A DNA stretch of 63,165 bases, filler included, from Octopus bimaculoides (lineage: Eukaryota), in NCBI RefSeq assembly GCF_001194135.2. It is 6 parts of 6 records of this genome, joined end to end, with 100 filler letters (N's around TTAATTAATTAA, not from the genome) between each part and the next. Parts side by side here need not be neighbours in the genome. Positions count along the whole stretch, not along the records: positions 37,054 to 50,304 come from NC_068985.1; 5 more parts are not named here. One strand, written 5' to 3'. Within the stretch, counting starts at the first letter, position 1, and the number at the start of each line of letters is the position of its first letter. Positions 40,384 to 48,830 of this stretch are shown one piece after another. Position numbers and translations under genes: made by a program. The notes under the pieces were generated by a model. That model searched no databases, was not told the origin of the DNA, and was given only the letters and a program-made list of their open reading frames with translations.

Positions 40384-40904
40384 NNNNNNNNNNNNNNNNN
40401 NNNNNNNNNNNNNNNNNNNNNNNNNNNNNNNNNNNNNNNNNNNNNNNNNNNNNNNNNNNNNNNNNNNNNNNNNNNNNNNNNNNNNNNNNNNNNNNNNNNN
40501 NNNNNNNNNNNNNNNNNNNNNNNNNNNNNNNNNNNNNNNNNNNNNNNNNNNNNNNNNNNNNNNNNNNNNNNNNNNNNNNNNNNNTATATAAATGTATATT
40601 TATATATGTATATATATATATATATATATAATCAAAATAAGCAACAGGATATCAAGAGGTGATGCAGTACGACCGTTTCAAGCGGCTCCATTTAATTGAA
40701 CAATGCAATCATCACATCAATTTAAATGCAGGGCTATCCTCAGCTGCATAAATAAATAGAATTTTTTTAATCAGTTGGACACATTAATATAATTTTACTC
40801 AAATGCTCTAATAGAGCAAGAAGACGGAAAGAGTTCATGTTACGACTAATGTAGCTAAGAATATACTACACTTCTAAGAATTGTATGAAGTTTGTTGGGG
40901 TCAT

Positions 40905-41690
40905 GACTAGTTCTGTAGCGCGCCAGCAGGTAGCAACACATGGTTGCGTGCGCAGTGAGAGAGCTAGCAGTGACCTTCATGAGGCAGTGTGCCGAGTGAC
41001 ATCGCTGTGTTTACTTCGCAAGTTGTGATATTTGTATGTTTGTGATCACATGTATGCTGTAGTCTGCGATTTTGTCATGGATAGGAATAAAGATCCAACA
41101 TGAAATTTTGCGTTAAACTTGGAAAATCTGCTACAGAGATATTGAGCATGGGTGGTACGCAATGTTTCGAGTGACACGGGCGCTTTAAAAGCGGAAGAAC
41201 GTCTCTGGAAGACGATGCGCGATCTGGAAGACCTGCCACAAGCGTCATCCACAGAAATGTGGTTTTGTGCATCGAGAATTCGTGTCTCAGAGTCAGGCCG
41301 TCAATCAAGAGTTCTACTGCAACGTTTGAAGCGTTTGTGGAACACGAAGAATTGGATTCTTTACCGAGCTCTCCTCACTTGTGAGTTTTTCGCCAAAGAC
41401 AACATGGTATCGCTTCCACGCCCACCCTATTCGTCAGCGCCTGCGGACTTCCATCTCTTTCCAAAGATGAAAATGCAGCTCAAAGGTCACCGTTTCAACA
41501 CTGTTGTTGAGATCCAGAGTGAATCGCAGAAGGTCCTCGACTCACTTACGGAAAACGACTCCCAGGCCGGATTTCAGAAGTAGCAGAATCGCTGGGACCG
41601 GTGCATTGCTGCGCAAGATGACTATTTCGAAGGAGATAATGTTAAAACTTAGGGAAATAAGTCCGGGGAACCTTTTGATGCCGCCTCGTA
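40905..41690 (+). mobile_element. mariner element, internally deleted
   Basis: KFCVKLGKSATE, RFKSGRTSLEDDARSGRP, PPYS...APADFHLFPKMK..LKGHRF and RWDRCIAAQDDYFE. The 3' TIR ends cctcg-TA at 41690. Confidence 0.85.
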
Positions 41691-41989: not shown

Positions 41990-42433
41990 TCTTTTATCTT
42001 TCACTTGCTTCAGTCATTGGACTGCAACCATGCTGGGACACGCCTTGAGGAGTTTAGTCAAGCAAATCGACTAAATTTATTTGACTAAGCCCCTCAAAGG
42101 TTTAGTCAAATCCTTGACGGGTTTAGTCAAGGGTTTGACTTATTTTTTAAAGTCTGATACTGTTTCTATCGATCTCTTAGGCGATCCACTAAGTTACGGG
42201 GACGTATACAAGCCAACACGGTTGTCAAGCGATGGCTTGGGAGCAAACACAAAAACACACACATATATGTATATACGACGGCTTCCACACAGTTTCCGTT
42301 TACCAAATTCATTCACAAGATTATGGTCGACCCAATGATATAGTAGAAGATGCTTGCCCAAGGTACTACGCAATAGGACTGAACCCGAAACCATGTGGTT
42401 GGGAAGCAAGCTTCTTGCCACACAGCCATGCCT
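41990..42433 (-). mobile_element. SINE family A in tetraspanin intron 1
   Basis: Reverse complement of the family A consensus, ending cacagccatgcct. Confidence 0.8.
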
Positions 42434-42483
42434 AGCCTACTTTTCTTTCTAATAGAGATAGTTCTTCATTTTGTATTACTTAC

Positions 42484-42543
42484 AAAAAGTAAAAGATTGA
42501 GAATGACAATAAGGCTTCTTCCGCATGATTCAACGTAATCCAT
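42484..42543 (-). CDS. Tetraspanin coding exon 1 (N-terminus and start of TM1)
   Basis: Acceptor tttcttttatatttcag| at 42552, then 8 nt of 5'UTR. ATG at 42543 gives MDYVESCGRSLIVILNLLLF (60 nt), ending at donor TTT|GTAAGT, phase 0. Fits the tetraspanin C..L...N.LF pattern. Confidence 0.8.
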
Positions 42544-42870
42544 TTTCCTTGCTGAAATATAAAAGAAAGATAGAAATAACATAGAATTCTCGACTTGCGT
42601 ATGTGTTATTAATAATATCAGTCCAGTTCTAAAACATATGGAGTCAAAGATTACGTGTAGATGTGACATAAGTAAATAATGTACTGTCATTTCATTTTTA
42701 TTTTATTTTTAGCTTCAATGTATGTATACATACTTCAAGTGACATCTTAAATTTAATCTCATTTCATTTTTCGATGAAACAGATTACATAAGATGTTTAA
42801 TAGAAATTTAATCAAGATGAGGCATTCTTGTTGTAAAACATTTGCAACTTAAAACCATTTATGTATGTAT

Positions 42871-42963
42871 CCATAACAGCCGATCTTACCAATCGGTTTC
42901 GCACTAGGGATCCAACGGAGTCCGATTATGAAACCCTGCACTCATCAGAGGTAACCGTTATGG
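42871..42963 (-). ncRNA. Type I hammerhead ribozyme (intact core)
   Basis: Minus strand reads ccataacggttacct-CTGATGA-gtgcaggg...ccctagtgc-GAAAC-cgattg-GTA-agatcggctgttatgg. All core nucleotides are present, with G10.1-C11.1, a 3-bp stem III, a GUA triplet and a 9-bp distal stem I. Folded by hand. Confidence 0.75.
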
Positions 42964-44198
42964 AACGAAATATAACGACAGTTCTCTATATATATATAGG
43001 CAGTCCTAGCTACTCCTTGGTATGCGCCCTTTGATAGACAACCGCTTAAAATATAAAAGTTTCACCTTCGTACATTTTAAACACTAACTCAATCAATGAT
43101 AGTTTATCAGTACGTGCAACTTAACTTTACCTACACCGTAAGTATGAAAGCAAAGGTGACCTTGGAGAGGAAAACTGCAGCATAGTACCCTTTTTTTACA
43201 ATTTTTTTCTTTTAAGATGATTTTAACTAAATAGGTTTACTATCAATCAATGTAATTATCCATGGCAAAAATAATTTCACATAAAATTTGAATTCTAAAA
43301 TTCGTTTTTTTTTTTTTGTTATTGTATGCAGAAGAGGAGGATTTTTTTTACGGTCTCGCTGTTCGTTACTCATGTGACCGCCATCATCCAATCGACTTGA
43401 GTCAGTTCTTAACGATTAAGTCAACGGCCGCGTTAACAAACCTAATCTAAATGTTTTGGAAGGTCTAGGTTAGCAACTTTAGGAGTGGTCTTTGTTCAGC
43501 CACCTTTAATCCACTTTTAATCCGATTGGTTTGCCAAACAATAAACTAATCTTAACATTTCTGGGCGAAAATGAATTCAATGTAAGAGTGTGTTTATGTG
43601 CGTGTAAATGTACATCTACATGTGTGTGTGTCTACTGCGTATATNNNNNNNNNNNNNNNNNNNNNNNNNNNNNNNNNNNNNNNNNNNNNNNNNNNNNNNN
43701 NNNNNNNNNNNNNNNNNNNNNNNNNNNNNNNNNNNNNNNNNNNNNNNNNNNNNNNNNNNNNNNNNNNNNNNNNNNNNNNNNNNNNNNNNNNNNNNNNNNN
43801 NNNNNNNNNNNNNNNNNNNNNNNNNNNNNNNNNNNNNNNNNNNNNNNNNNNNNNNNNNNNNNNNNNNNNNNNNNNNNNNNNNNNNNNNNNNNNNNNNNNN
43901 NNNNNNNNNNNNNNNNNNNNNNNNNNNNNNNNNNNNNNNNNNNNNNNNNNNNNNNNNNNNNNNNNNNNNNNNNNNNNNNNNNNNNNNNNNNNNNNNNNNN
44001 NNNNNNNNNNNNNNNNNNNNNNNNNNNNNNNNNNNNNNNNNNNNNNNNNNNNNNNNNNNNNNNNNNNNNNNNNNNNNNNNNNNNNNNNNNNNNNNNNNNN
44101 NNNNNNNNNNNNNNNNNNNNNNNNNNNNNNNNNNNNNNNNNNNNNNNNNNNNNNNNNNNNNNNNNNNNNNNNNNNNNNNNNNNNNNNNNNNNNNNNNN

Positions 44199-44245
<47 letters not shown>

Positions 44246-44695
44246 CGCGCGCGCGCGCTTTATTGTGAGCATATGCTGAGAAAGAGGAAAAATAGTAGGC
44301 CGAAGAAAAGATAAAATGACATTTTAAAATCAAATTTAAAGTATAAGACTTTGTAGAGTTTCGAACTTACATGCAAAAACATAATCTGCACATTTAAACT
44401 CTTTGAGATATGATAAACATAGCAAATCCACTTCTCTCGCAGAGCATATACACTACCTTAAGAGAAAGAATGTACACTACTGGACAAAATCTTAAGACCA
44501 GTGAAAAAAACTGCCGAAATGAACTCCTTGCAGACCGTAATATTCGACTATTTTTCATTATAGATTCATTATTGGCAAATAGAAAATGCTATACGAAAAT
44601 CTAAAAAAATGTTTAACATTTAAAGTACAAAATATGCATTGTATGAAAACTAACAATATTTTACCTGGTCAAAAGTTTAAGACCATGACAAATAT

Positions 44696-45079
44696 GTTGT
44701 TGGCACTCTGTCGCTTACGACGTCGAGGGTTCCAGTTGATCCGATCAACGGAACAGCCTGCTCGTGAAATTAACGTGCAAGTGGCTGAGCACTCCACAGA
44801 CACGTGTACCCTTAACGTAGTTCTCGGGGATATTCAGCGTGACACAGTGTGACAAGCCTGGCCCTTTGAATTACAGGCACAACAGAAACAGGAAGTAATA
44901 GTGAGAGAAAGTTGTGGTGAAAGAGTACAGCAGGGTTCGCCACCATCCCCTGCCGGAGCCTCGTGGAGCTTTAGGTGTTTTCGTTCAATAAACACTCACA
45001 ACGCCCGGTCTGGGAATCGAAACCGCGATCCTATGACCGCGAGTCCGCTGCCCTAACCACTGGGCCATTGCACCTCCAC
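44696..45079 (-). mobile_element. tRNA-derived SINE, family C
   Basis: tRNA-like head ggcccagtggttagggcagcggactcgcggtcataggatcgcggtttcgattccc. Related copy at 20640-20995 (+) and a tail fragment near 51965-52015. Confidence 0.8.
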
Positions 45080-45669
45080 TCTTCTTATATACTCCATTTA
45101 AAATCTGAACGTTAACTTCCTGTGGTTTAGAGCTGCACCAATGCCAATGGAGAACAGTGTAAAGCACTCGTATAGATCCTATGATTCTACAACTCAGTAT
45201 TTTTTCTATTGATACTTGCACGTATGTTTGGGAAGCTGGATTAATAGTAAGACTATATTTAAATAATAGCCCAACAAGCTTAGCGGACAGATAGAAGTCG
45301 CCATTTGCAAGAGCTGACGAACAGAAAATGTAAACAATCGGCCCGTTCAACCCGGTTCCAGGATCCGTTCTGTTTACACTGTCTCGTTAGAGCGCTCTCT
45401 CATACAGCGCTCAGCCAGCCGAAGGCTTTCGGGACACGTGTAGTTTACGGTAACTAACCTACCTGTTACAGAAAATTAGCAGCATATACTGGCACTTTCT
45501 GTGATTGACCAGTTCGTGTCAGTCAGACCAATCACAATAAACTTTACAGCTACCGGTTTCTTTTAAACATTTACAGACAGGGTTTCTTGAAAAGGCTCAA
45601 GTTGTCACTCTCTTATAAGCAGTAGTACTCTCACTGGGTGAACATCAATTTCCAGCAACTGTAAAACTC

Positions 45670-45870
45670 CCTCGTGTCTCCAAGTGATAAACGAAGGAAA
45701 TATCAAGCTGGTTTTAAGCTGCAAATGGTAGCATACGCCAAATTCCACAACAACTGTGCTGTCGCGAGAGATTACGGTGTATGCACACTAGCCGATTCTA
45801 GAGAAGCATGTAGCAGACAAGGTGCAGGAGCAGCGTCAAAATGGATACGCTGTTTCAAGACCTTTATCTT
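45670..45870 (+). mobile_element. pogo-like transposase N-terminal remnant
   Basis: KRRKYQAGFKLQMVAYAKFHNNCAVARDYGV (Brinker-type DNA-binding domain), then in another frame LEKHVADKVQEQRQNGYAVSR (start of a CENPB-type HTH). Confidence 0.65.
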
Positions 45871-46429
45871 GGTCTCGTGAACCAAGATAAAATTTACAAA
45901 TTAAAGAAAACACTAGTAATGTCCTTTATAATAACATTTCTAATATAATACAATTTAATATTATACATACAATAAGTAAGTCTGTAAATCCATTTCAAGT
46001 AAATGGTGGTATTATGGTATACTTGACACCATCTTAGTTCTTGTAAAATAACAGACGTCTAAGTGACGTCACTACAGTAGTGTTTACACCAGCCAGGTAC
46101 GTTTGATGTGTATTATAGTAGGTAATTTACAATATTTAGCCACCTTTTGAAAAGAACTGGATAAATTTTAAACAACCGGGCCTGCAGAATTGTTGCATAC
46201 AAAGTTTACTGATTGAAACAGTTAAAATACTATTGAAGCACAAGGAAAACAGAGGCTTCTGGGGGTCGCAGGGGAAGCTACAGCTCACACGCTCCCTTTA
46301 GCTATGAACAACGCGCCTTCGGCGCTCGAGCTACTTTCCACGAAAACTTAGGGTAGTTTTATATAGCAAGTATAACTCAAAACCCACTTCTTAAATGGAA
46401 ATCCTGGGGGGGGGGAGTATATACGATAC

Positions 46430-46590
46430 ATAAAGCAAAATATACAAATCTGCATGTATACATACATACATGCAAAAATACTGTTGTTGATGTTGAAATT
46501 CCAATGACAGAGCCTTGGATCTAGATTAGAAACCGGCTCTTTCTCTATTGACAAGAAATCTTGAAATAAAACTGAATATGACAGAAACTC
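46430..46590 (+). mobile_element. 3'UTR-only copy of the R4-like LINE
   Basis: ctgttgttgatgttgaaattccaat...gagccttggatctag.ttagaaacc.gctctttctctatt..caagaaatcttgaa matches the minus strand of 26530-26660. Confidence 0.7.
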
Positions 46591-47087
46591 TGTTAATAAA
46601 CAAAATCACCACTGGTTAATATGACGATTTGGGCAAACTAAAATTAAAATATTCTGTAATAAAAGTCAGAGGCCATCTTGATTTTAATATTACACAAATA
46701 TCCGAGCAAGCAAAACAGAAAGAAGATACATTGAAACAATATTTGCAACTACTGTATCCAAAATACAAATTCAATTTTACTTTATCATTATTGGAATAAT
46801 AGACAGATCTTGTTAAATTTCTTCTAGCCACTCAAATTTTCTAAAAGTTTCACCTGATTATTTTTTAAATATACTTTTGATGAAGTTTTGTTTGTTGACG
46901 ACGAAAATCGCATTCATCGTTTTTTGTTTGTTTTTTTCGTGAAATTGATAATAAAGAAGTTTCGAGCATTTAAAGTTATGTAATTTTAGCCAATCGAATG
47001 ACTCCACTGGCCACAGCGAAGTTTGAACTATATGTTGCCATAGCAATTCCAGAGCATCGTTTTATGCCAACGATGAACAAGGTTGAG

Positions 47088-47260
47088 TTTGTCAAATCGC
47101 AAGATGGGACTCATACTCAACAAGTAGAAAGTACTTGAGAGAATGAATGGCGTTGTAGCACCCATTATTCTACAGTGGATTTGTATCTCTGCGAGTTGAT
47201 ACAGCGCCGATGGTACGAAAAATACGATCTATTTGAAAACTCTTAGAATGTGTAGGACAA
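47088..47260 (+). mobile_element. Merlin/ISXO2-like transposase C-terminal remnant
   Basis: FVKSQDGTHTQQVES...VDLYLCELI.RR.Y...DLFE resembles the FVDPxTGxHTQxIES / YLCEFxWRR motifs. Confidence 0.45.
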
Positions 47261-48555
47261 TTTCTTTAACTTCTAACAGACCAAGTACCAACTTATTTAA
47301 AACAAAGCTAGAGTGGATTCGGTTCCCCAGAGAAGTAAAGTAATATCATAATCGTCAAGGACGGTGGACTTAATACGCATCTGAACATAACAATTTTAAT
47401 TATTTTTAATTTGAAATATTAAGAGTTTTCACGCGTAGTTTGTATTTTTTTTCTGGACATCTATATTTGTGATTTCTGAATGGGTTTAAAATGTGTTATT
47501 CTCTTAATAAGTAGCATTTTGCGCCAAAACAAATCTTGAGCCCGGTTTCACTAAGAAACACTTTATCTCCATATCCATTGCCCATTTTAATACCATCACC
47601 TGGCCGTTTGGTATCTTCAGTGGAGGAAAGACACTTAAGGTCCTTTACTCCGCTTTTGTGTAGTAAAGGCACTCTTTAGAGAAGTAAAGATGTTCTATTA
47701 AAAGCATTCAGGCCAGTTTCTAATCTGACAATAATTTCATCCTTTCCCGATTCGAGGCTTGTAGAAACTGAAAATGGTGACTGGCACTGCACTTCCACCC
47801 ACAAGTCATGTAAAACAAAAGAGAAAGAACGATTGGCTTGCAAATTACGGGTTTAATCAGTCGTTAGAGTTTTCAAAATAAGTATATTATCAATAGTATT
47901 ATTATCCAGAACNNNNNNNNNNNNNNNNNNNNNNNNNNNNNNNNNNNNNNNNNNNNNNNNNNNNNNNNNNNNNNNNNNNNNNNNNNNNNNNNNNNNNNNN
48001 NNNNNNNNNNNNNNNNNNNNNNNNNNNNNNNNNNNNNNNNNNNNNNNNNNNNNNNNNNNNNNNNNNNNNNNNNNNNNNNNNNNNNNNNNNNNNNNNNNNN
48101 NNNNNNNNNNNNNNNNNNNNNNNNNNNNNNNNNNNNNNNNNNNNNNNNNNNNNNNNNNNNNNNNNNNNNNNNNNNNNNNNNNNNNNNNNNNNNNNNNNNN
48201 NNNNNNNNNNNNNNNNNNNNNNNNNNNNNNNNNNNNNNNNNNNNNNNNNNNNNNNNNNNNNNNNNNNNNNNNNNNNNNNNNNNNNNNNNNNNNNNNNNNN
48301 NNNNNNNNNNNNNNNNNNNNNNNNNNNNNNNNNNNNNNNNNNNNNNNNNNNNNNNNNNNNNNNNNNNNNNNNNNNNNNNNNNNNNNNNNNNNNNNNNNNN
48401 NNNNNNNNNNNNNNNNNNNNNNNNNNNNNNNNNNNNNNNNNNNNNNNNNNNNNNNNNNNNNNNNNNNNNNNNNNNNNNNNNNNNNNNNNNNNNNNNNNNN
48501 AAAGGGTTAACCGAAGTCATTAGATGGTTTATTCTATTCAGTATAATGAAGACAC

Positions 48556-48830
48556 TGTAGTAACGCCGTGCGCATGCGTAGTCTCACGCATGCGTGGAAT
48601 TCAACATCCAAGCTTTCCCGCTTTATTCTGTCTCTTTCTTGCTGGCCAGCGATTGAGCATGGACGTGTCCAGCTCGCTCCATCTTTCGAACTCACGCCAG
48701 ACAGCTCACATCAACATACCGATGTCTCAGCAACCATGTTCTCAACAACCAAGAGTAAAGCTGTATATATTCCACCATGAATAAATATTGTTTGAGTTGA
48801 TAGTTTGGAGTTCTGCGTTCCGTTAATTCC
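48556..48830 (+). mobile_element. Diverged single-arm copy of the 38457 TIR family
   Basis: TGTAGTAACGCC...gagcatggacgtgt...cagctcacatcaacat...tctcagcaaccatg...aataaatattg is colinear with 38457-38740. Confidence 0.65.

What the first reader, a model, noticed from the sequence alone, without database searches (positions are those of the whole stretch)
42871..42963. Full type I hammerhead ribozyme, sense to and just upstream of the tetraspanin first coding exon
Seen in sequence (minus strand): invariant core CUGAUGA (42948-42942) and GAAA (42900-42897), closing pair G10.1-C11.1, and an extended stem II (gugc/gugc with two G.U pairs, then aggg/cccu). Stem III is ACC-gauu-GGU and the triplet is GUA, with predicted cleavage between 42887 and 42886. 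Stem I has 2 proximal bp, an internal loop and a 9-bp distal helix (ccauaacgg/cuguuaugg). Established: a stem I internal loop plus a large loop II is the architecture of fast natural type I hammerheads, as in metazoan retrozymes/PLEs and the intronic amniote HH9/HH10. Inference: it lies about 320 nt upstream of the acceptor at 42552, so if that acceptor is used it sits in the 5'UTR intron. Self-cleavage could then couple to splicing or gene output, or mark a retrozyme-like family in cephalopods. No tandem partner is visible, so circRNA production from this copy is not implied.
Basis: partly seen in the sequence, partly recalled or inferred. Interest (0 to 1): 0.85.

Follow-up and report, generated by a model that had tools for sequence, protein, structure and literature searches.

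The report
Lone hammerhead ribozyme motif upstream of tetraspanin
A complete, far-from-chance hammerhead self-cleaving RNA motif sits on the gene's strand about 320 bases upstream of a tetraspanin gene's first coding exon; it is most likely a stray copy of the ribozymes that mobile elements scatter through animal genomes, and nothing yet shows that it cuts or regulates the gene.

Summary
On the minus strand, 42964-42870 carries every invariant hammerhead core position: CUGAUGA, G10.1-C11.1, GAAAC, A15.1-U16.1 and a GUA triplet. The three helices have type I topology, with predicted cleavage between 42887 and 42886. A descriptor no stricter than the candidate expects about 1e-7 to 1e-5 such motifs in the window, and 0.01-0.14 in a 3-Gb genome.

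Family membership by model is not met. No Rfam family matches, even at E<=10 on 111 nt. A covariance model I built from four experimentally active animal type I hammerheads does not recover it either. Three features depart from the usual form:
- "Loop II" is really a 41-nt extended hairpin.
- Helix I has only 2 Watson-Crick pairs next to the cleavage site.
- A 6-bp alternative hairpin sequesters the cleavage site.

It is a single copy. There is no tandem partner, no second copy in 13 kb, no rod-like flanks, no RT/GIY-YIG remnant nearby and no relatives in the searchable collections. Sense orientation to the tetraspanin gene is confirmed. Intron status rests only on an AG acceptor.

Best reading: a solitary, mobile-element-derived type I hammerhead, possibly still a slow self-cleaver. 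Domestication is untested. This is a new member of a known kind, of moderate interest.

The parts
42870..42964 (-). Whole type I hammerhead motif: a three-way junction of 95 nt
   Evidence: Read directly. It is the only descriptor hit in the piece.
42953..42964 (-). Helix I, 5' strand of the distal helix; it pairs with 42881-42870
   Evidence: Nine Watson-Crick/G.U pairs (42963-42955 with 42871-42879), plus U42954.G42880, U42953.G42881 and T42964-A42870. Pair probability is 0.999.
42949..42952 (-). Helix I proximal part, 5' strand. A42952 and C42951 form the internal loop; C42950 (2.2) and U42949 (2.1) are paired.
   Evidence: Only two Watson-Crick pairs flank the cleavage site: U42949-A42886 and C42950-G42885. 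An alternative reading adds a C42951.A42884 mismatch, an A42952-U42883 pair and a bulged C42882.
42942..42948 (-). Core box CUGAUGA (C3-A9)
   Evidence: Read directly.
42901..42941 (-). Helix II as a 41-nt extended hairpin. GUGC/GUGC (G10.1-C11.1 plus two G.U pairs) is followed by bulged A42905, AGGG/CCCU, UUCA/UGGA, CGG/CCG and an ACU triloop.
   Evidence: -11.6 kcal/mol folded alone. A42905 occupies the place of the last loop-2 nucleotide, which is A in 3 of 4 verified type I hammerheads (column 23 of A1).
42897..42900 (-). Core box GAAA (G12, A13, A14, A15.1), followed by C15.2
   Evidence: Read directly. It fits the GAAAY consensus quoted in the PMC7229834 supplement.
42888..42897 (-). Helix III hairpin ACC-GAUU-GGU (A15.1-U16.1 plus two C-G pairs and a tetraloop)
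   Evidence: It is one pair longer than the '2 bp + tetraloop' helix III of invertebrate retrozyme hammerheads (PMC7229834).
42886..42887 (-). Predicted scissile bond between A17 (42887) and A1.1 (42886); the triplet is GUA
   Evidence: It follows from the core numbering. GUA is also the triplet of the active axolotl Ax353 hammerhead.
42870..42886 (-). Helix I, 3' strand: proximal A42886 and G42885, internal loop 42884-42882, distal 42881-42870
42880..42896 (-). Competing inactive hairpin CCGAUU(42896-42891)/GAUCGG(42885-42880). Its loop holds the scissile bond.
   Evidence: It is part of the MFE fold, -29.0 kcal/mol against -24.7 for the hammerhead fold. Pair probability is 0.84, against 0.02 for helix III and 0.001 for proximal helix I.
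42484..42551 (-). Tetraspanin first coding exon (acceptor AG 42553-42552, ATG 42543-42541, donor GT 42483-42482)
   Evidence: Pfam PF00335, E=4.7e-10, for exons 1+2.
39965..40228 (-). Tetraspanin second coding exon
42987..42998 (-). (TA)6 run, 23-34 nt upstream of the 5' end of the hammerhead
   Evidence: It is either a microsatellite or a TATA-like element; function not tested.

Best explanation
This is a genuine type I hammerhead ribozyme motif by descent and design, not a chance look-alike. It is present as a solitary copy and most likely came from the hammerhead-bearing retroelement lineage of animals: non-LTR retrozymes, or SINE-like or PLE-related repeats. It lies in sense orientation in the 5' region of a tetraspanin gene, either in a 5'UTR intron or in promoter-proximal DNA.

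If it is transcribed on the minus strand, the junction would fold as follows. Helix I is 42964-42949 with 42886-42870. Helix II is the 42941-42901 hairpin. Helix III is 42897-42888. This fold places G12, G8 and the C3-A9 box around the GUA triplet. The 2'-OH of A42887 then attacks its 3' phosphate, leaving a 2',3'-cyclic phosphate on ...GGUA and a 5'-OH on AGAUCGG....

Shown: the complete core, the three helices, the strand and the position. Inferred: the mobile-element origin, transcription, and catalytic competence. I expect cleavage to be slow at best. Only two Watson-Crick pairs flank the site in helix I, and a 6-bp alternative hairpin competes for it. I assume no dedicated host function.
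For: - Every invariant position is canonical, including GAAAY and RUH (consensus quoted).
- The chance expectation is 1e-7 to 2e-6 per 100 kb and 0.008-0.14 per 3-Gb genome. There were zero hits in 60 Mb of random sequence and one hit in the piece.
- Helix III (3 bp + tetraloop) is at least as strong as the 2 bp + tetraloop of active invertebrate retrozyme hammerheads.
- The GUA triplet matches the active axolotl Ax353 motif.
- Bulged A42905 sits where the last loop-2 nucleotide sits, which is A in 3 of the 4 verified motifs. This fits a hairpin inserted into loop 2.
- Most eukaryotic type I hammerheads belong to repeats (PMC3088659; PMC7229834).
- In Xenopus, retrozyme monomers are spread evenly over the chromosomes, and about 43% of all retrozyme sequences overlap introns (bioRxiv 10.64898/2026.07.22.740005).
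- The motif is a 47-50% GC block in a flank of about 25% GC.
- The low predicted helix III probability is not informative. Verified active hammerheads score just as low on that measure.
Against: - No Rfam family, hammerhead or other, matches at E<=10.
- A model built from four active type I hammerheads recovers only a 6.7-bit fragment.
- Proximal helix I has 2 Watson-Crick pairs. Its pair probability is 0.001, against 0.15-0.8 in verified motifs.
- The hammerhead fold is 4.3 kcal/mol above the MFE.
- There is no second copy, tandem unit or rod-like flank.
- No RT or GIY-YIG remnant was found. The three minus-strand frames of the 3.6 kb beyond the assembly gap upstream of the motif gave no Pfam match. 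Nine further ORFs from both strands elsewhere in the piece gave only one unrelated BrkDBD match.
- No related sequence turned up in viral, metagenome or prokaryote collections. The mobile-element origin therefore rests on base rates, not on an observed family.
Confidence: 0.55

Rival explanations
1. Dead relic. The motif descends from a real hammerhead-bearing element but no longer cleaves. Drift has weakened proximal helix I (an A.C mismatch at 1.3/2.3, five G.U pairs overall), and the alternative hairpin traps the cleavage site.
For: - Proximal helix I pair probability is 0.001, against 0.15-0.8 in active controls.
- The alternative hairpin has probability 0.84, and the hammerhead fold is 4.3 kcal/mol above the MFE.
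- Five G.U pairs and one A.C among about 26 pairs is the pattern that transitions leave in a once-perfect helix.
- No covariance model recognises it.
Against: - Not one of the roughly 15 invariant core positions is mutated. That would be unlikely after heavy neutral decay.
- Helices II and III and the distal part of helix I are intact.
- Nearest-neighbour folding also fails to predict helix III for hammerheads that are known to be active.
Confidence: 0.2
2. Domesticated cis-regulatory ribozyme. On this reading it is a single-copy hammerhead kept by selection in the 5'UTR intron or first exon-intron boundary of the tetraspanin gene. Self-cleavage would compete with splicing or set transcript output, as proposed for the amniote intronic hammerheads in RECK and CTCL.
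For: - It is sense to the gene and 318 nt upstream of a good polypyrimidine-AG acceptor.
- It is compact, with no recognisable element flanks or rod structure around it.
- The core is perfect.
- A GGUAAG 5' splice-site-like hexamer (G|GUAAGA, G at 42889) overlaps the scissile bond. It ranks second among candidate donors in the 1.1-kb upstream region.
- There is a precedent for domesticated intronic type I hammerheads (PMC6155905).
Against: - No comparative data could be obtained.
- Intron status is unproven.
- Nothing in Rfam, including its HH9/HH10 models, matched at E<=10.
- The splice-site overlap is expected by chance in roughly 10% of such regions, and its score (6.7 bits on a rough matrix) is unremarkable.
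- The base rate favours repeat-derived copies.
Confidence: 0.1
3. Chance look-alike. On this reading an ordinary genomic hairpin or small inverted-repeat element happens to contain CUGAUGA and GAAA at compatible positions.
For: - No covariance model supports it.
- No relatives were found.
- The 93-nt fold is only modestly better than shuffles (z = -1.8).
- The finding was selected by eye from an unknown number of windows.
Against: The expected number is 0.008-0.14 even for a whole 3-Gb genome on both strands, and 1e-7 to 2e-6 per 100 kb. There were no hits in 60 Mb of random sequence even at the minimal descriptor level. Beyond the two boxes, G10.1-C11.1, Y15.2, U16.1, R16.2 and H17 are all correct.
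Confidence: 0.07

Closest known systems
Type I hammerheads of metazoan non-LTR retrozymes (coral Amil224, mussel Mg353, axolotl Ax353/Ax330; Cervera & de la Pena 2020, PMC7229834)
   Same: The topology is type I. The CUGAUGA / GAAAC / RUH core is identical. Helix III is short and capped by a tetraloop. The GUA triplet matches Ax353. The 4-bp basal helix II is followed by an A at the last 'loop 2' position. The surrounding sequence has low GC.
   Different: Helix II carries a 33-nt extension in place of a 5-6-nt loop. Helix I has 2 proximal Watson-Crick pairs rather than 5-6. There is no tandem repeat unit, no self-paired 170-400-nt unit and no second copy in 13 kb. A model built from these four sequences does not recover the candidate.
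Amniote intronic hammerheads (the Rfam HH9/HH10 families; motifs in RECK, CTCL and DTNB; de la Pena & Garcia-Robles 2010, as reviewed in PMC6155905)
   Same: It is a solitary type I hammerhead lying sense within, or next to, a protein-coding gene's non-coding 5' region. Cleavage could in principle compete with splicing.
   Different: Those motifs are defined by deep orthologous conservation and canonical loop-loop contacts. Here conservation is untestable, nothing in Rfam matched at E<=10, and intron status is only inferred.
Minimal hammerheads in the pseudo-LTRs of Penelope-like elements (Cervera & de la Pena 2014; PMC6155905, PMC8557442)
   Same: They are animal type I hammerheads linked to retroelements. 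PLE-type elements often insert at microsatellites such as (TA)n, and a (TA)6 run lies 23-34 nt upstream here.
   Different: PLE hammerheads usually lack helix III and tertiary contacts, whereas this motif has a 3-bp helix III and long helices I and II. No RT or GIY-YIG remnant was found: none in the three minus-strand frames of the 3.6 kb upstream, and none in nine further ORFs sampled on both strands.
Schistosoma Sm-alpha hammerhead (crystal structure 2GOZ; recalled from memory plus PMC6155905)
   Same: It is type I, with a 4-bp helix II ending in a loop whose last nucleotide is A. The 5'-strand internal loop of helix I contains UAC; the candidate has UUAC at 42954-42951.
   Different: In Schistosoma the helix I loop lies about 5-6 pairs from the core. 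Here it lies 2-4 pairs away, and loop 2 is replaced by a hairpin. The resemblance is recalled from memory and was not tested.

Membership tests
Hammerhead ribozyme (class) | CUGANGA box (C3-A9) | tested here: met
   CUGAUGA at 42948-42942, minus strand.
Hammerhead ribozyme (class) | GAAA box (G12-A15.1) followed by Y15.2 | tested here: met
   GAAAC at 42900-42896. The consensus GAAAY is quoted.
Hammerhead ribozyme (class) | A15.1-U16.1 pair and R16.2-U16.1-H17 cleavage triplet | tested here: met
   A42897-U42888; the triplet is G42889-U42888-A42887.
Hammerhead ribozyme (class) | G10.1-C11.1 closing helix II, and three helices around the core | tested here: met
   G42941-C42901. Helix II has 4+4(+7) pairs, helix III has 3 pairs, and helix I has 2 + 11-12 pairs. 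Caveat: only 2 Watson-Crick pairs of helix I adjoin the core.
Hammerhead ribozyme (class) | Tertiary contact between helix I loop and helix II loop (needed for fast cleavage) | tested here: inconclusive
   A42905 occupies the position of the last loop-2 nucleotide, which is A in 3 of 4 verified motifs. However, the helix I loop is 2-4 pairs from the core rather than 5-6, and no covariation data are available.
Hammerhead ribozyme (class) | Match to curated covariance models (Rfam release 15, 4227 families, which include its hammerhead models) | tested here: not met
   No match at gathering score over 13 kb, nor at E<=10 over 451 nt or 111 nt. My own model of four active type I motifs gives only a 6.7-bit fragment. 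The likely causes are the 33-nt helix II extension and the short proximal helix I.
Hammerhead ribozyme (class) | Site-specific Mg2+-dependent self-cleavage | not testable with these tools
   This needs an in vitro transcription and cleavage assay.
Metazoan non-LTR retrozyme | Type I hammerhead inside tandem repeats of about 170-400 bp | tested here: not met
   No tandem array and no second copy were found. A 554-nt assembly gap begins 680 nt upstream, so an adjacent array cannot be fully excluded.
Metazoan non-LTR retrozyme | Unit RNA is highly self-paired (rod-like or branched) | tested here: not met
   The 183-nt context folds no better than shuffles (z = -0.09).
Metazoan non-LTR retrozyme | Multi-copy family in the host genome | not testable with these tools
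   The source genome is not in any searchable collection.
Penelope-like element pseudo-LTR hammerhead | Adjacent RT (and GIY-YIG) open reading frame on the same strand | tested here: not met
   Pfam finds no RT or GIY-YIG in the three minus-strand frames of 44246-47880. The nine further ORFs tested on both strands gave only an unrelated BrkDBD match.
Domesticated intronic hammerhead (HH9/HH10 type) | Lies in an intron, sense to the gene | tested here: inconclusive
   Sense orientation is shown. Intron status rests on a single AG acceptor at 42553-42552; no upstream exon was identified.
Domesticated intronic hammerhead (HH9/HH10 type) | Conserved at the orthologous locus across species | not testable with these tools
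   No tetraspanin orthologue or homologous DNA could be retrieved.

The most novel reading that the evidence does not exclude
The motif could be a single-copy, orthologously conserved and catalytically active hammerhead of a new architectural variant: a hairpin inserted in loop 2 and a short proximal helix I. On this reading it works as a cis-regulator of the tetraspanin gene. Its scissile bond overlaps a GGUAAG 5' splice-site-like sequence, and a (TA)6 run lies about 30 nt upstream of its 5' end. U1 binding or splicing and self-cleavage would then be mutually exclusive fates of the first exon-intron boundary. This would be the first invertebrate counterpart of the amniote intronic hammerheads.
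Probability: 0.06. Interest if true: 0.8.

Novelty: new member of a known kind. Interest (0 to 1): 0.4.

Why it matters
Type I hammerheads are common in animal genomes, usually as thousands of retroelement copies, so one more is not surprising in itself. Two things make this copy worth a cheap follow-up.

First, Rfam's covariance models miss it entirely although its core is perfect. Hammerheads with an expanded helix II and a short proximal helix I may therefore be under-counted by standard annotation.

Second, it lies sense and promoter-proximal or intronic in a protein-coding gene. An active ribozyme there would sever the capped 5' end from the coding exons.

If a genome-wide search shows a family, it would define a hammerhead-bearing repeat in this lineage; I found no report of one for cephalopods in the searchable literature. 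If the motif is single-copy and conserved, it would be a rare invertebrate example of ribozyme domestication.

Tried and rejected
1. Rfam cmscan at gathering score on the whole piece, then at E<=10 on 451 nt and on 111 nt. No hammerhead hit; only DLEU2_2 and CRISPR-DR64 noise.
2. My own covariance model R1, built from coral, mussel and two axolotl hammerheads and run with filters off. The candidate was not recovered; the top hits (up to 11.8 bits) are stem-only noise.
3. My first pattern search, CTGATGA-N{8,38}-GAAA, missed the motif because its gap is 41 nt. I replaced it with a script.
4. A degenerate family pattern run on viral contigs gave 0 hits. On metagenome contigs it gave 14 hits. All look like bacterial coding sequence without helix I, which is about the number expected by chance.
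5. The exact halves of the motif on viral contigs gave 0 hits, and two chance 18-mer hits that lack GAAA. The specific pattern on prokaryote genomes gave 0 hits.
6. The tetraspanin exon 1+2 protein against the 5.8-billion protein collection gave no homologue at E<=1e-5. Exact look-ups of two window ORFs found nothing on record. The orthologous locus, species identity and copy number therefore could not be addressed.
7. The search for PLE or retrotransposon coding remnants next to the motif found none. The first attempt, with raw DNA references, failed on stop codons.
8. Secondary-structure probability as a test of activity was rejected as non-discriminating for helix III, because verified active hammerheads score equally low. 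I kept it only for proximal helix I.
9. A rod-like retrozyme structure in the 183-nt context was not supported (z = -0.09).
10. Literature searches for hammerheads in cephalopods, octopus or squid found nothing specific.

Full report
**1. Observation.**

I read the minus strand of 42780-43060 and rebuilt the proposed structure pair by pair.

- The CUGAUGA box is at 42948-42942 and the GAAA box at 42900-42897, followed by C.
- G10.1 (42941) pairs with C11.1 (42901).
- Helix II is GUGC/GUGC with two tandem G.U pairs, then a bulged A42905, then AGGG/CCCU.
- Helix III is A42897-U42888, C42896-G42889 and C42895-G42890, with a GAUU loop.
- A17 is 42887, so the predicted scissile bond is 42887|42886 and the triplet is GUA.
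- Helix I has two proximal Watson-Crick pairs (U42949-A42886, C42950-G42885). An AC/AUC internal loop follows. It can also be read as a C.A mismatch, an A-U pair and a bulged C.
- The 9-bp CCAUAACGG/CUGUUAUGG helix comes next. Two U.G pairs and T42964-A42870 extend it to 11-12 pairs.

One correction is needed. The 24-nt 'large loop II' is predicted to pair further (UUCA/UGGA, CGG/CCG, ACU triloop). Helix II is therefore a 41-nt imperfect hairpin, -11.6 kcal/mol folded alone.

**2. Is it more than chance?**

I wrote a descriptor no stricter than the candidate. It requires:
- CUGANGA followed by G10.1;
- C11.1 followed by GAAA, 10-60 nt downstream;
- at least 4 contiguous helix II pairs;
- a helix III of at least 3 pairs, including A-U, with a 3-8-nt loop;
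- H17;
- at least 2 proximal helix I pairs;
- a distal helix within a 6x6 internal loop.

It finds exactly one hit on the two strands of the 13,251-nt piece. It finds none in 60 Mb of first-order Markov sequence trained on the piece; that run hit the time limit after 3 x 20 Mb.

A layered simulation gives these rates:
- 3.4e-9 per nt per strand for the basic descriptor, or one per 293 Mb;
- 2.3e-11 with a distal helix of at least 9 bp;
- 1.3e-12 with a distal helix of at least 12 bp.

This means 1e-7 to 2e-6 expected per 100 kb, and 0.008-0.14 per 3-Gb genome on both strands. The descriptor was written after seeing the candidate, and the number of windows screened is unknown. Even so, the whole-genome expectation stays below one. 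I treat chance as unlikely (about 7%).

**3. Tests against models of the family.**

These fail. Rfam release 15 gives no hit at gathering thresholds over the piece. It gives none at E<=10 over 451 nt or 111 nt. At that size, any hammerhead model score must be below roughly 13-15 bits.

I then took four type I hammerheads whose self-cleavage was measured from the supplement of PMC7229834: coral Amil224, mussel Mg353, and axolotl Ax353 and Ax330. I aligned them (A1), built a calibrated covariance model with the canonical structure (R1) and searched the piece with filters off. The candidate appears only as a 6.7-bit fragment (42933-42952), below unrelated stem-only noise.

The most economical reason is architectural. 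The verified motifs have a 4-bp helix II capped by 5-6 nt and 5-6 contiguous proximal helix I pairs. The candidate has a 33-nt extension inside helix II and two proximal pairs. So it passes the motif-descriptor definition the field uses (CUGANGA / GAAAY / RUH plus helices) but fails every covariance-model test I could run.

**4. Likely competence.**

*For.* No core position deviates. Helix III (3 bp + tetraloop) is at least as stable as the '2 bp + tetraloop' of efficiently cleaving invertebrate motifs. GUA is the triplet of Ax353. A42905 lies immediately 5' of the 4-bp basal helix II. That is the slot of the last loop-2 nucleotide, which is A in three of the four verified motifs (column 23 of A1). 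From my own memory it is also A in the Schistosoma ribozyme. This suggests a hairpin inserted into loop 2 that spares the contact adenine, but that is inference from a single sequence.

*Against.* The hammerhead fold (-24.7 kcal/mol) lies 4.3 kcal/mol above the MFE (-29.0). The MFE replaces helix III and proximal helix I by a 6-bp hairpin, CCGAUU(42896-42891)/GAUCGG(42885-42880), whose loop contains the scissile bond. In the ensemble this hairpin has probability 0.84, helix III 0.02 and the 1.1-2.1 pair 0.001.

*Control.* The four active hammerheads also show A15.1-U16.1 probabilities of 0.03 or less, so that number says little. Their 1.1-2.1 pairs, however, score 0.15-0.8. Proximal helix I is therefore a real weak point. 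I put detectable self-cleavage at roughly even odds, and fast cleavage as unlikely.

**5. Surroundings.**

*The gene.* The motif is on the same strand as a tetraspanin gene.
- The first coding exon is 42551-42484, with a polypyrimidine tract and AG at 42553-42552, ATG at 42543-42541 and donor GT at 42483.
- The second exon is 40228-39965.
- Joined, the two exons match Pfam Tetraspanin at E=4.7e-10.
- The 3' end of the motif is 318 nt upstream of the acceptor.
- Whether that acceptor is used, and where a 5' exon lies, cannot be seen. An assembly gap of 554 N starts at 43645, which is 680 nt upstream.

*Signs of a mobile element.*
- There is no tandem partner and no second copy, even a diverged one, in the piece.
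- The 183-nt context folds no better than shuffles (z = -0.09). The self-paired unit typical of retrozymes is therefore absent.
- No RT or GIY-YIG remnant was found. The three minus-strand frames of 44246-47880 gave no Pfam match. Nine other ORFs sampled from both strands across the piece gave only an unrelated BrkDBD match.
- No tRNA-like sequence is present.
- The motif is a 47-50% GC block, with about 25% GC downstream of it.

**6. Relatives elsewhere.**

None could be obtained.
- A degenerate family pattern gave 0 hits in viral contigs and 14 in metagenomes. All 14 look like bacterial coding sequence without helix I, about the number expected by chance.
- Exact halves gave 0 hits, plus two chance 18-mers without GAAA.
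- Prokaryote genomes gave 0 hits.
- The tetraspanin fragment has no homologue at E<=1e-5 in the protein collection, and two window ORFs are not on record.

Copy number, orthologous conservation, covariation and even the claimed cephalopod origin remain untested.

**7. What it most likely is.**

Established knowledge sets the base rate.
- Most eukaryotic type I hammerheads belong to repeats (PMC3088659).
- In animals these are non-LTR retrozymes and PLE-related sequences (PMC7229834; PMC6155905).
- In Xenopus, retrozyme monomers are dispersed evenly, and about 43% of all retrozyme sequences overlap introns (bioRxiv 10.64898/2026.07.22.740005).

A solitary copy in the 5' region of a gene is therefore ordinary for a species that hosts such elements. 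I give 0.55 to 'genuine, mobile-element-derived solitary type I hammerhead, possibly still a slow self-cleaver, with no dedicated host function'. I give 0.20 to the same origin but catalytically dead, 0.10 to a domesticated regulator of the tetraspanin gene, and 0.07 to chance.

**8. Comparison and novelty.**

It works like, and by core definition is, a hammerhead ribozyme. It cannot be filed as a retrozyme, because it lacks a tandem unit and a self-paired unit. It cannot be filed as a PLE hammerhead, because it has a helix III and no adjacent RT. It cannot be filed as an HH9/HH10-type domesticated motif, because there is no model match and conservation is untestable. The expanded helix II and short proximal helix I make it an atypical instance that standard annotation misses. 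I rate it a new member of a known kind, with interest 0.4.

The most novel reading still open is this (about 6%). The motif would be a conserved single-copy ribozyme whose scissile bond overlaps a GGUAAG 5' splice-site-like sequence. A (TA)6 run lies about 30 nt upstream of its 5' end. Self-cleavage would then be coupled to splicing of the first intron.

**9. Limits.**

The decisive experiments are a genome-wide and cross-species search, transcript mapping, an in vitro cleavage assay with core mutants, and cyclic-phosphate or 5'-OH end capture. They are standard and are listed separately.

Noticed in passing
window 42884-42890 (minus strand): The hammerhead's helix III 3' strand plus its cleavage site spell UUG|GUAAGA, a 5' splice-site-like sequence with G at 42889. 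It scores 6.7 bits on a rough matrix and ranks second among GT sites in the 1.1 kb upstream of the coding exon. If used with the acceptor at 42552, it would define a 337-nt intron.
   Followed up: partly
window 42987-42998: A (TA)6 run lies 23-34 nt upstream of the 5' end of the hammerhead. It could be a TATA-like element or simply a microsatellite. (TA)n is reported as a preferred insertion target of some PLE-type elements (PMC8557442).
   Followed up: no
window 38457-38737 and 38768-39048: This is a near-perfect inverted repeat: 281-nt arms, 98% complementary, and a 30-nt spacer that contains a 10-N run (38749-38758). It is either a foldback element or an assembly artefact. Partial copies at 91% identity lie at 48700-48743 and 48770-48792.
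   Followed up: no
window 37054-37270 (+) and 42115-42330 (-): Two inverted copies of an interspersed repeat, about 215 nt long and about 80% identical, with an internal TG/TA microsatellite. One sits in tetraspanin intron 1 just downstream of coding exon 1; the other sits at the edge of the piece.
   Followed up: partly
window 41152-41583 (+): The C-terminal part of this 143-aa ORF (…PADFHLFPKMKMQLKGHRFNTVVEIQ…) looks like a mariner transposase remnant inside tetraspanin intron 1. There is no Pfam hit, and only a weak match to the SETMAR transposase domain (E=0.1).
   Followed up: partly
window 45674-45880 (+): This 68-aa ORF matches the Brinker/psq-type DNA-binding domain (PF09607, E=2.8e-7). 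It is probably the N-terminus of a decayed pogo/Tigger-like transposase.
   Followed up: no
window 40384-40584, 43645-44198, 47913-48500: These are assembly gaps (N runs), flanked by microsatellites: (ATCT)n at 40320-40383, (CA)n at 40290-40320 and (GT)n at 44199-44245. The gap at 43645 is the nearest unknown sequence upstream of the hammerhead.
   Followed up: no
window 42043-42131: Three local copies (70-100% identity) of a 20-nt unit, CCTTGAGGAGTTTAGTCAAG, spaced 48 and 21 nt apart. They adjoin the interspersed repeat in intron 1.
   Followed up: no
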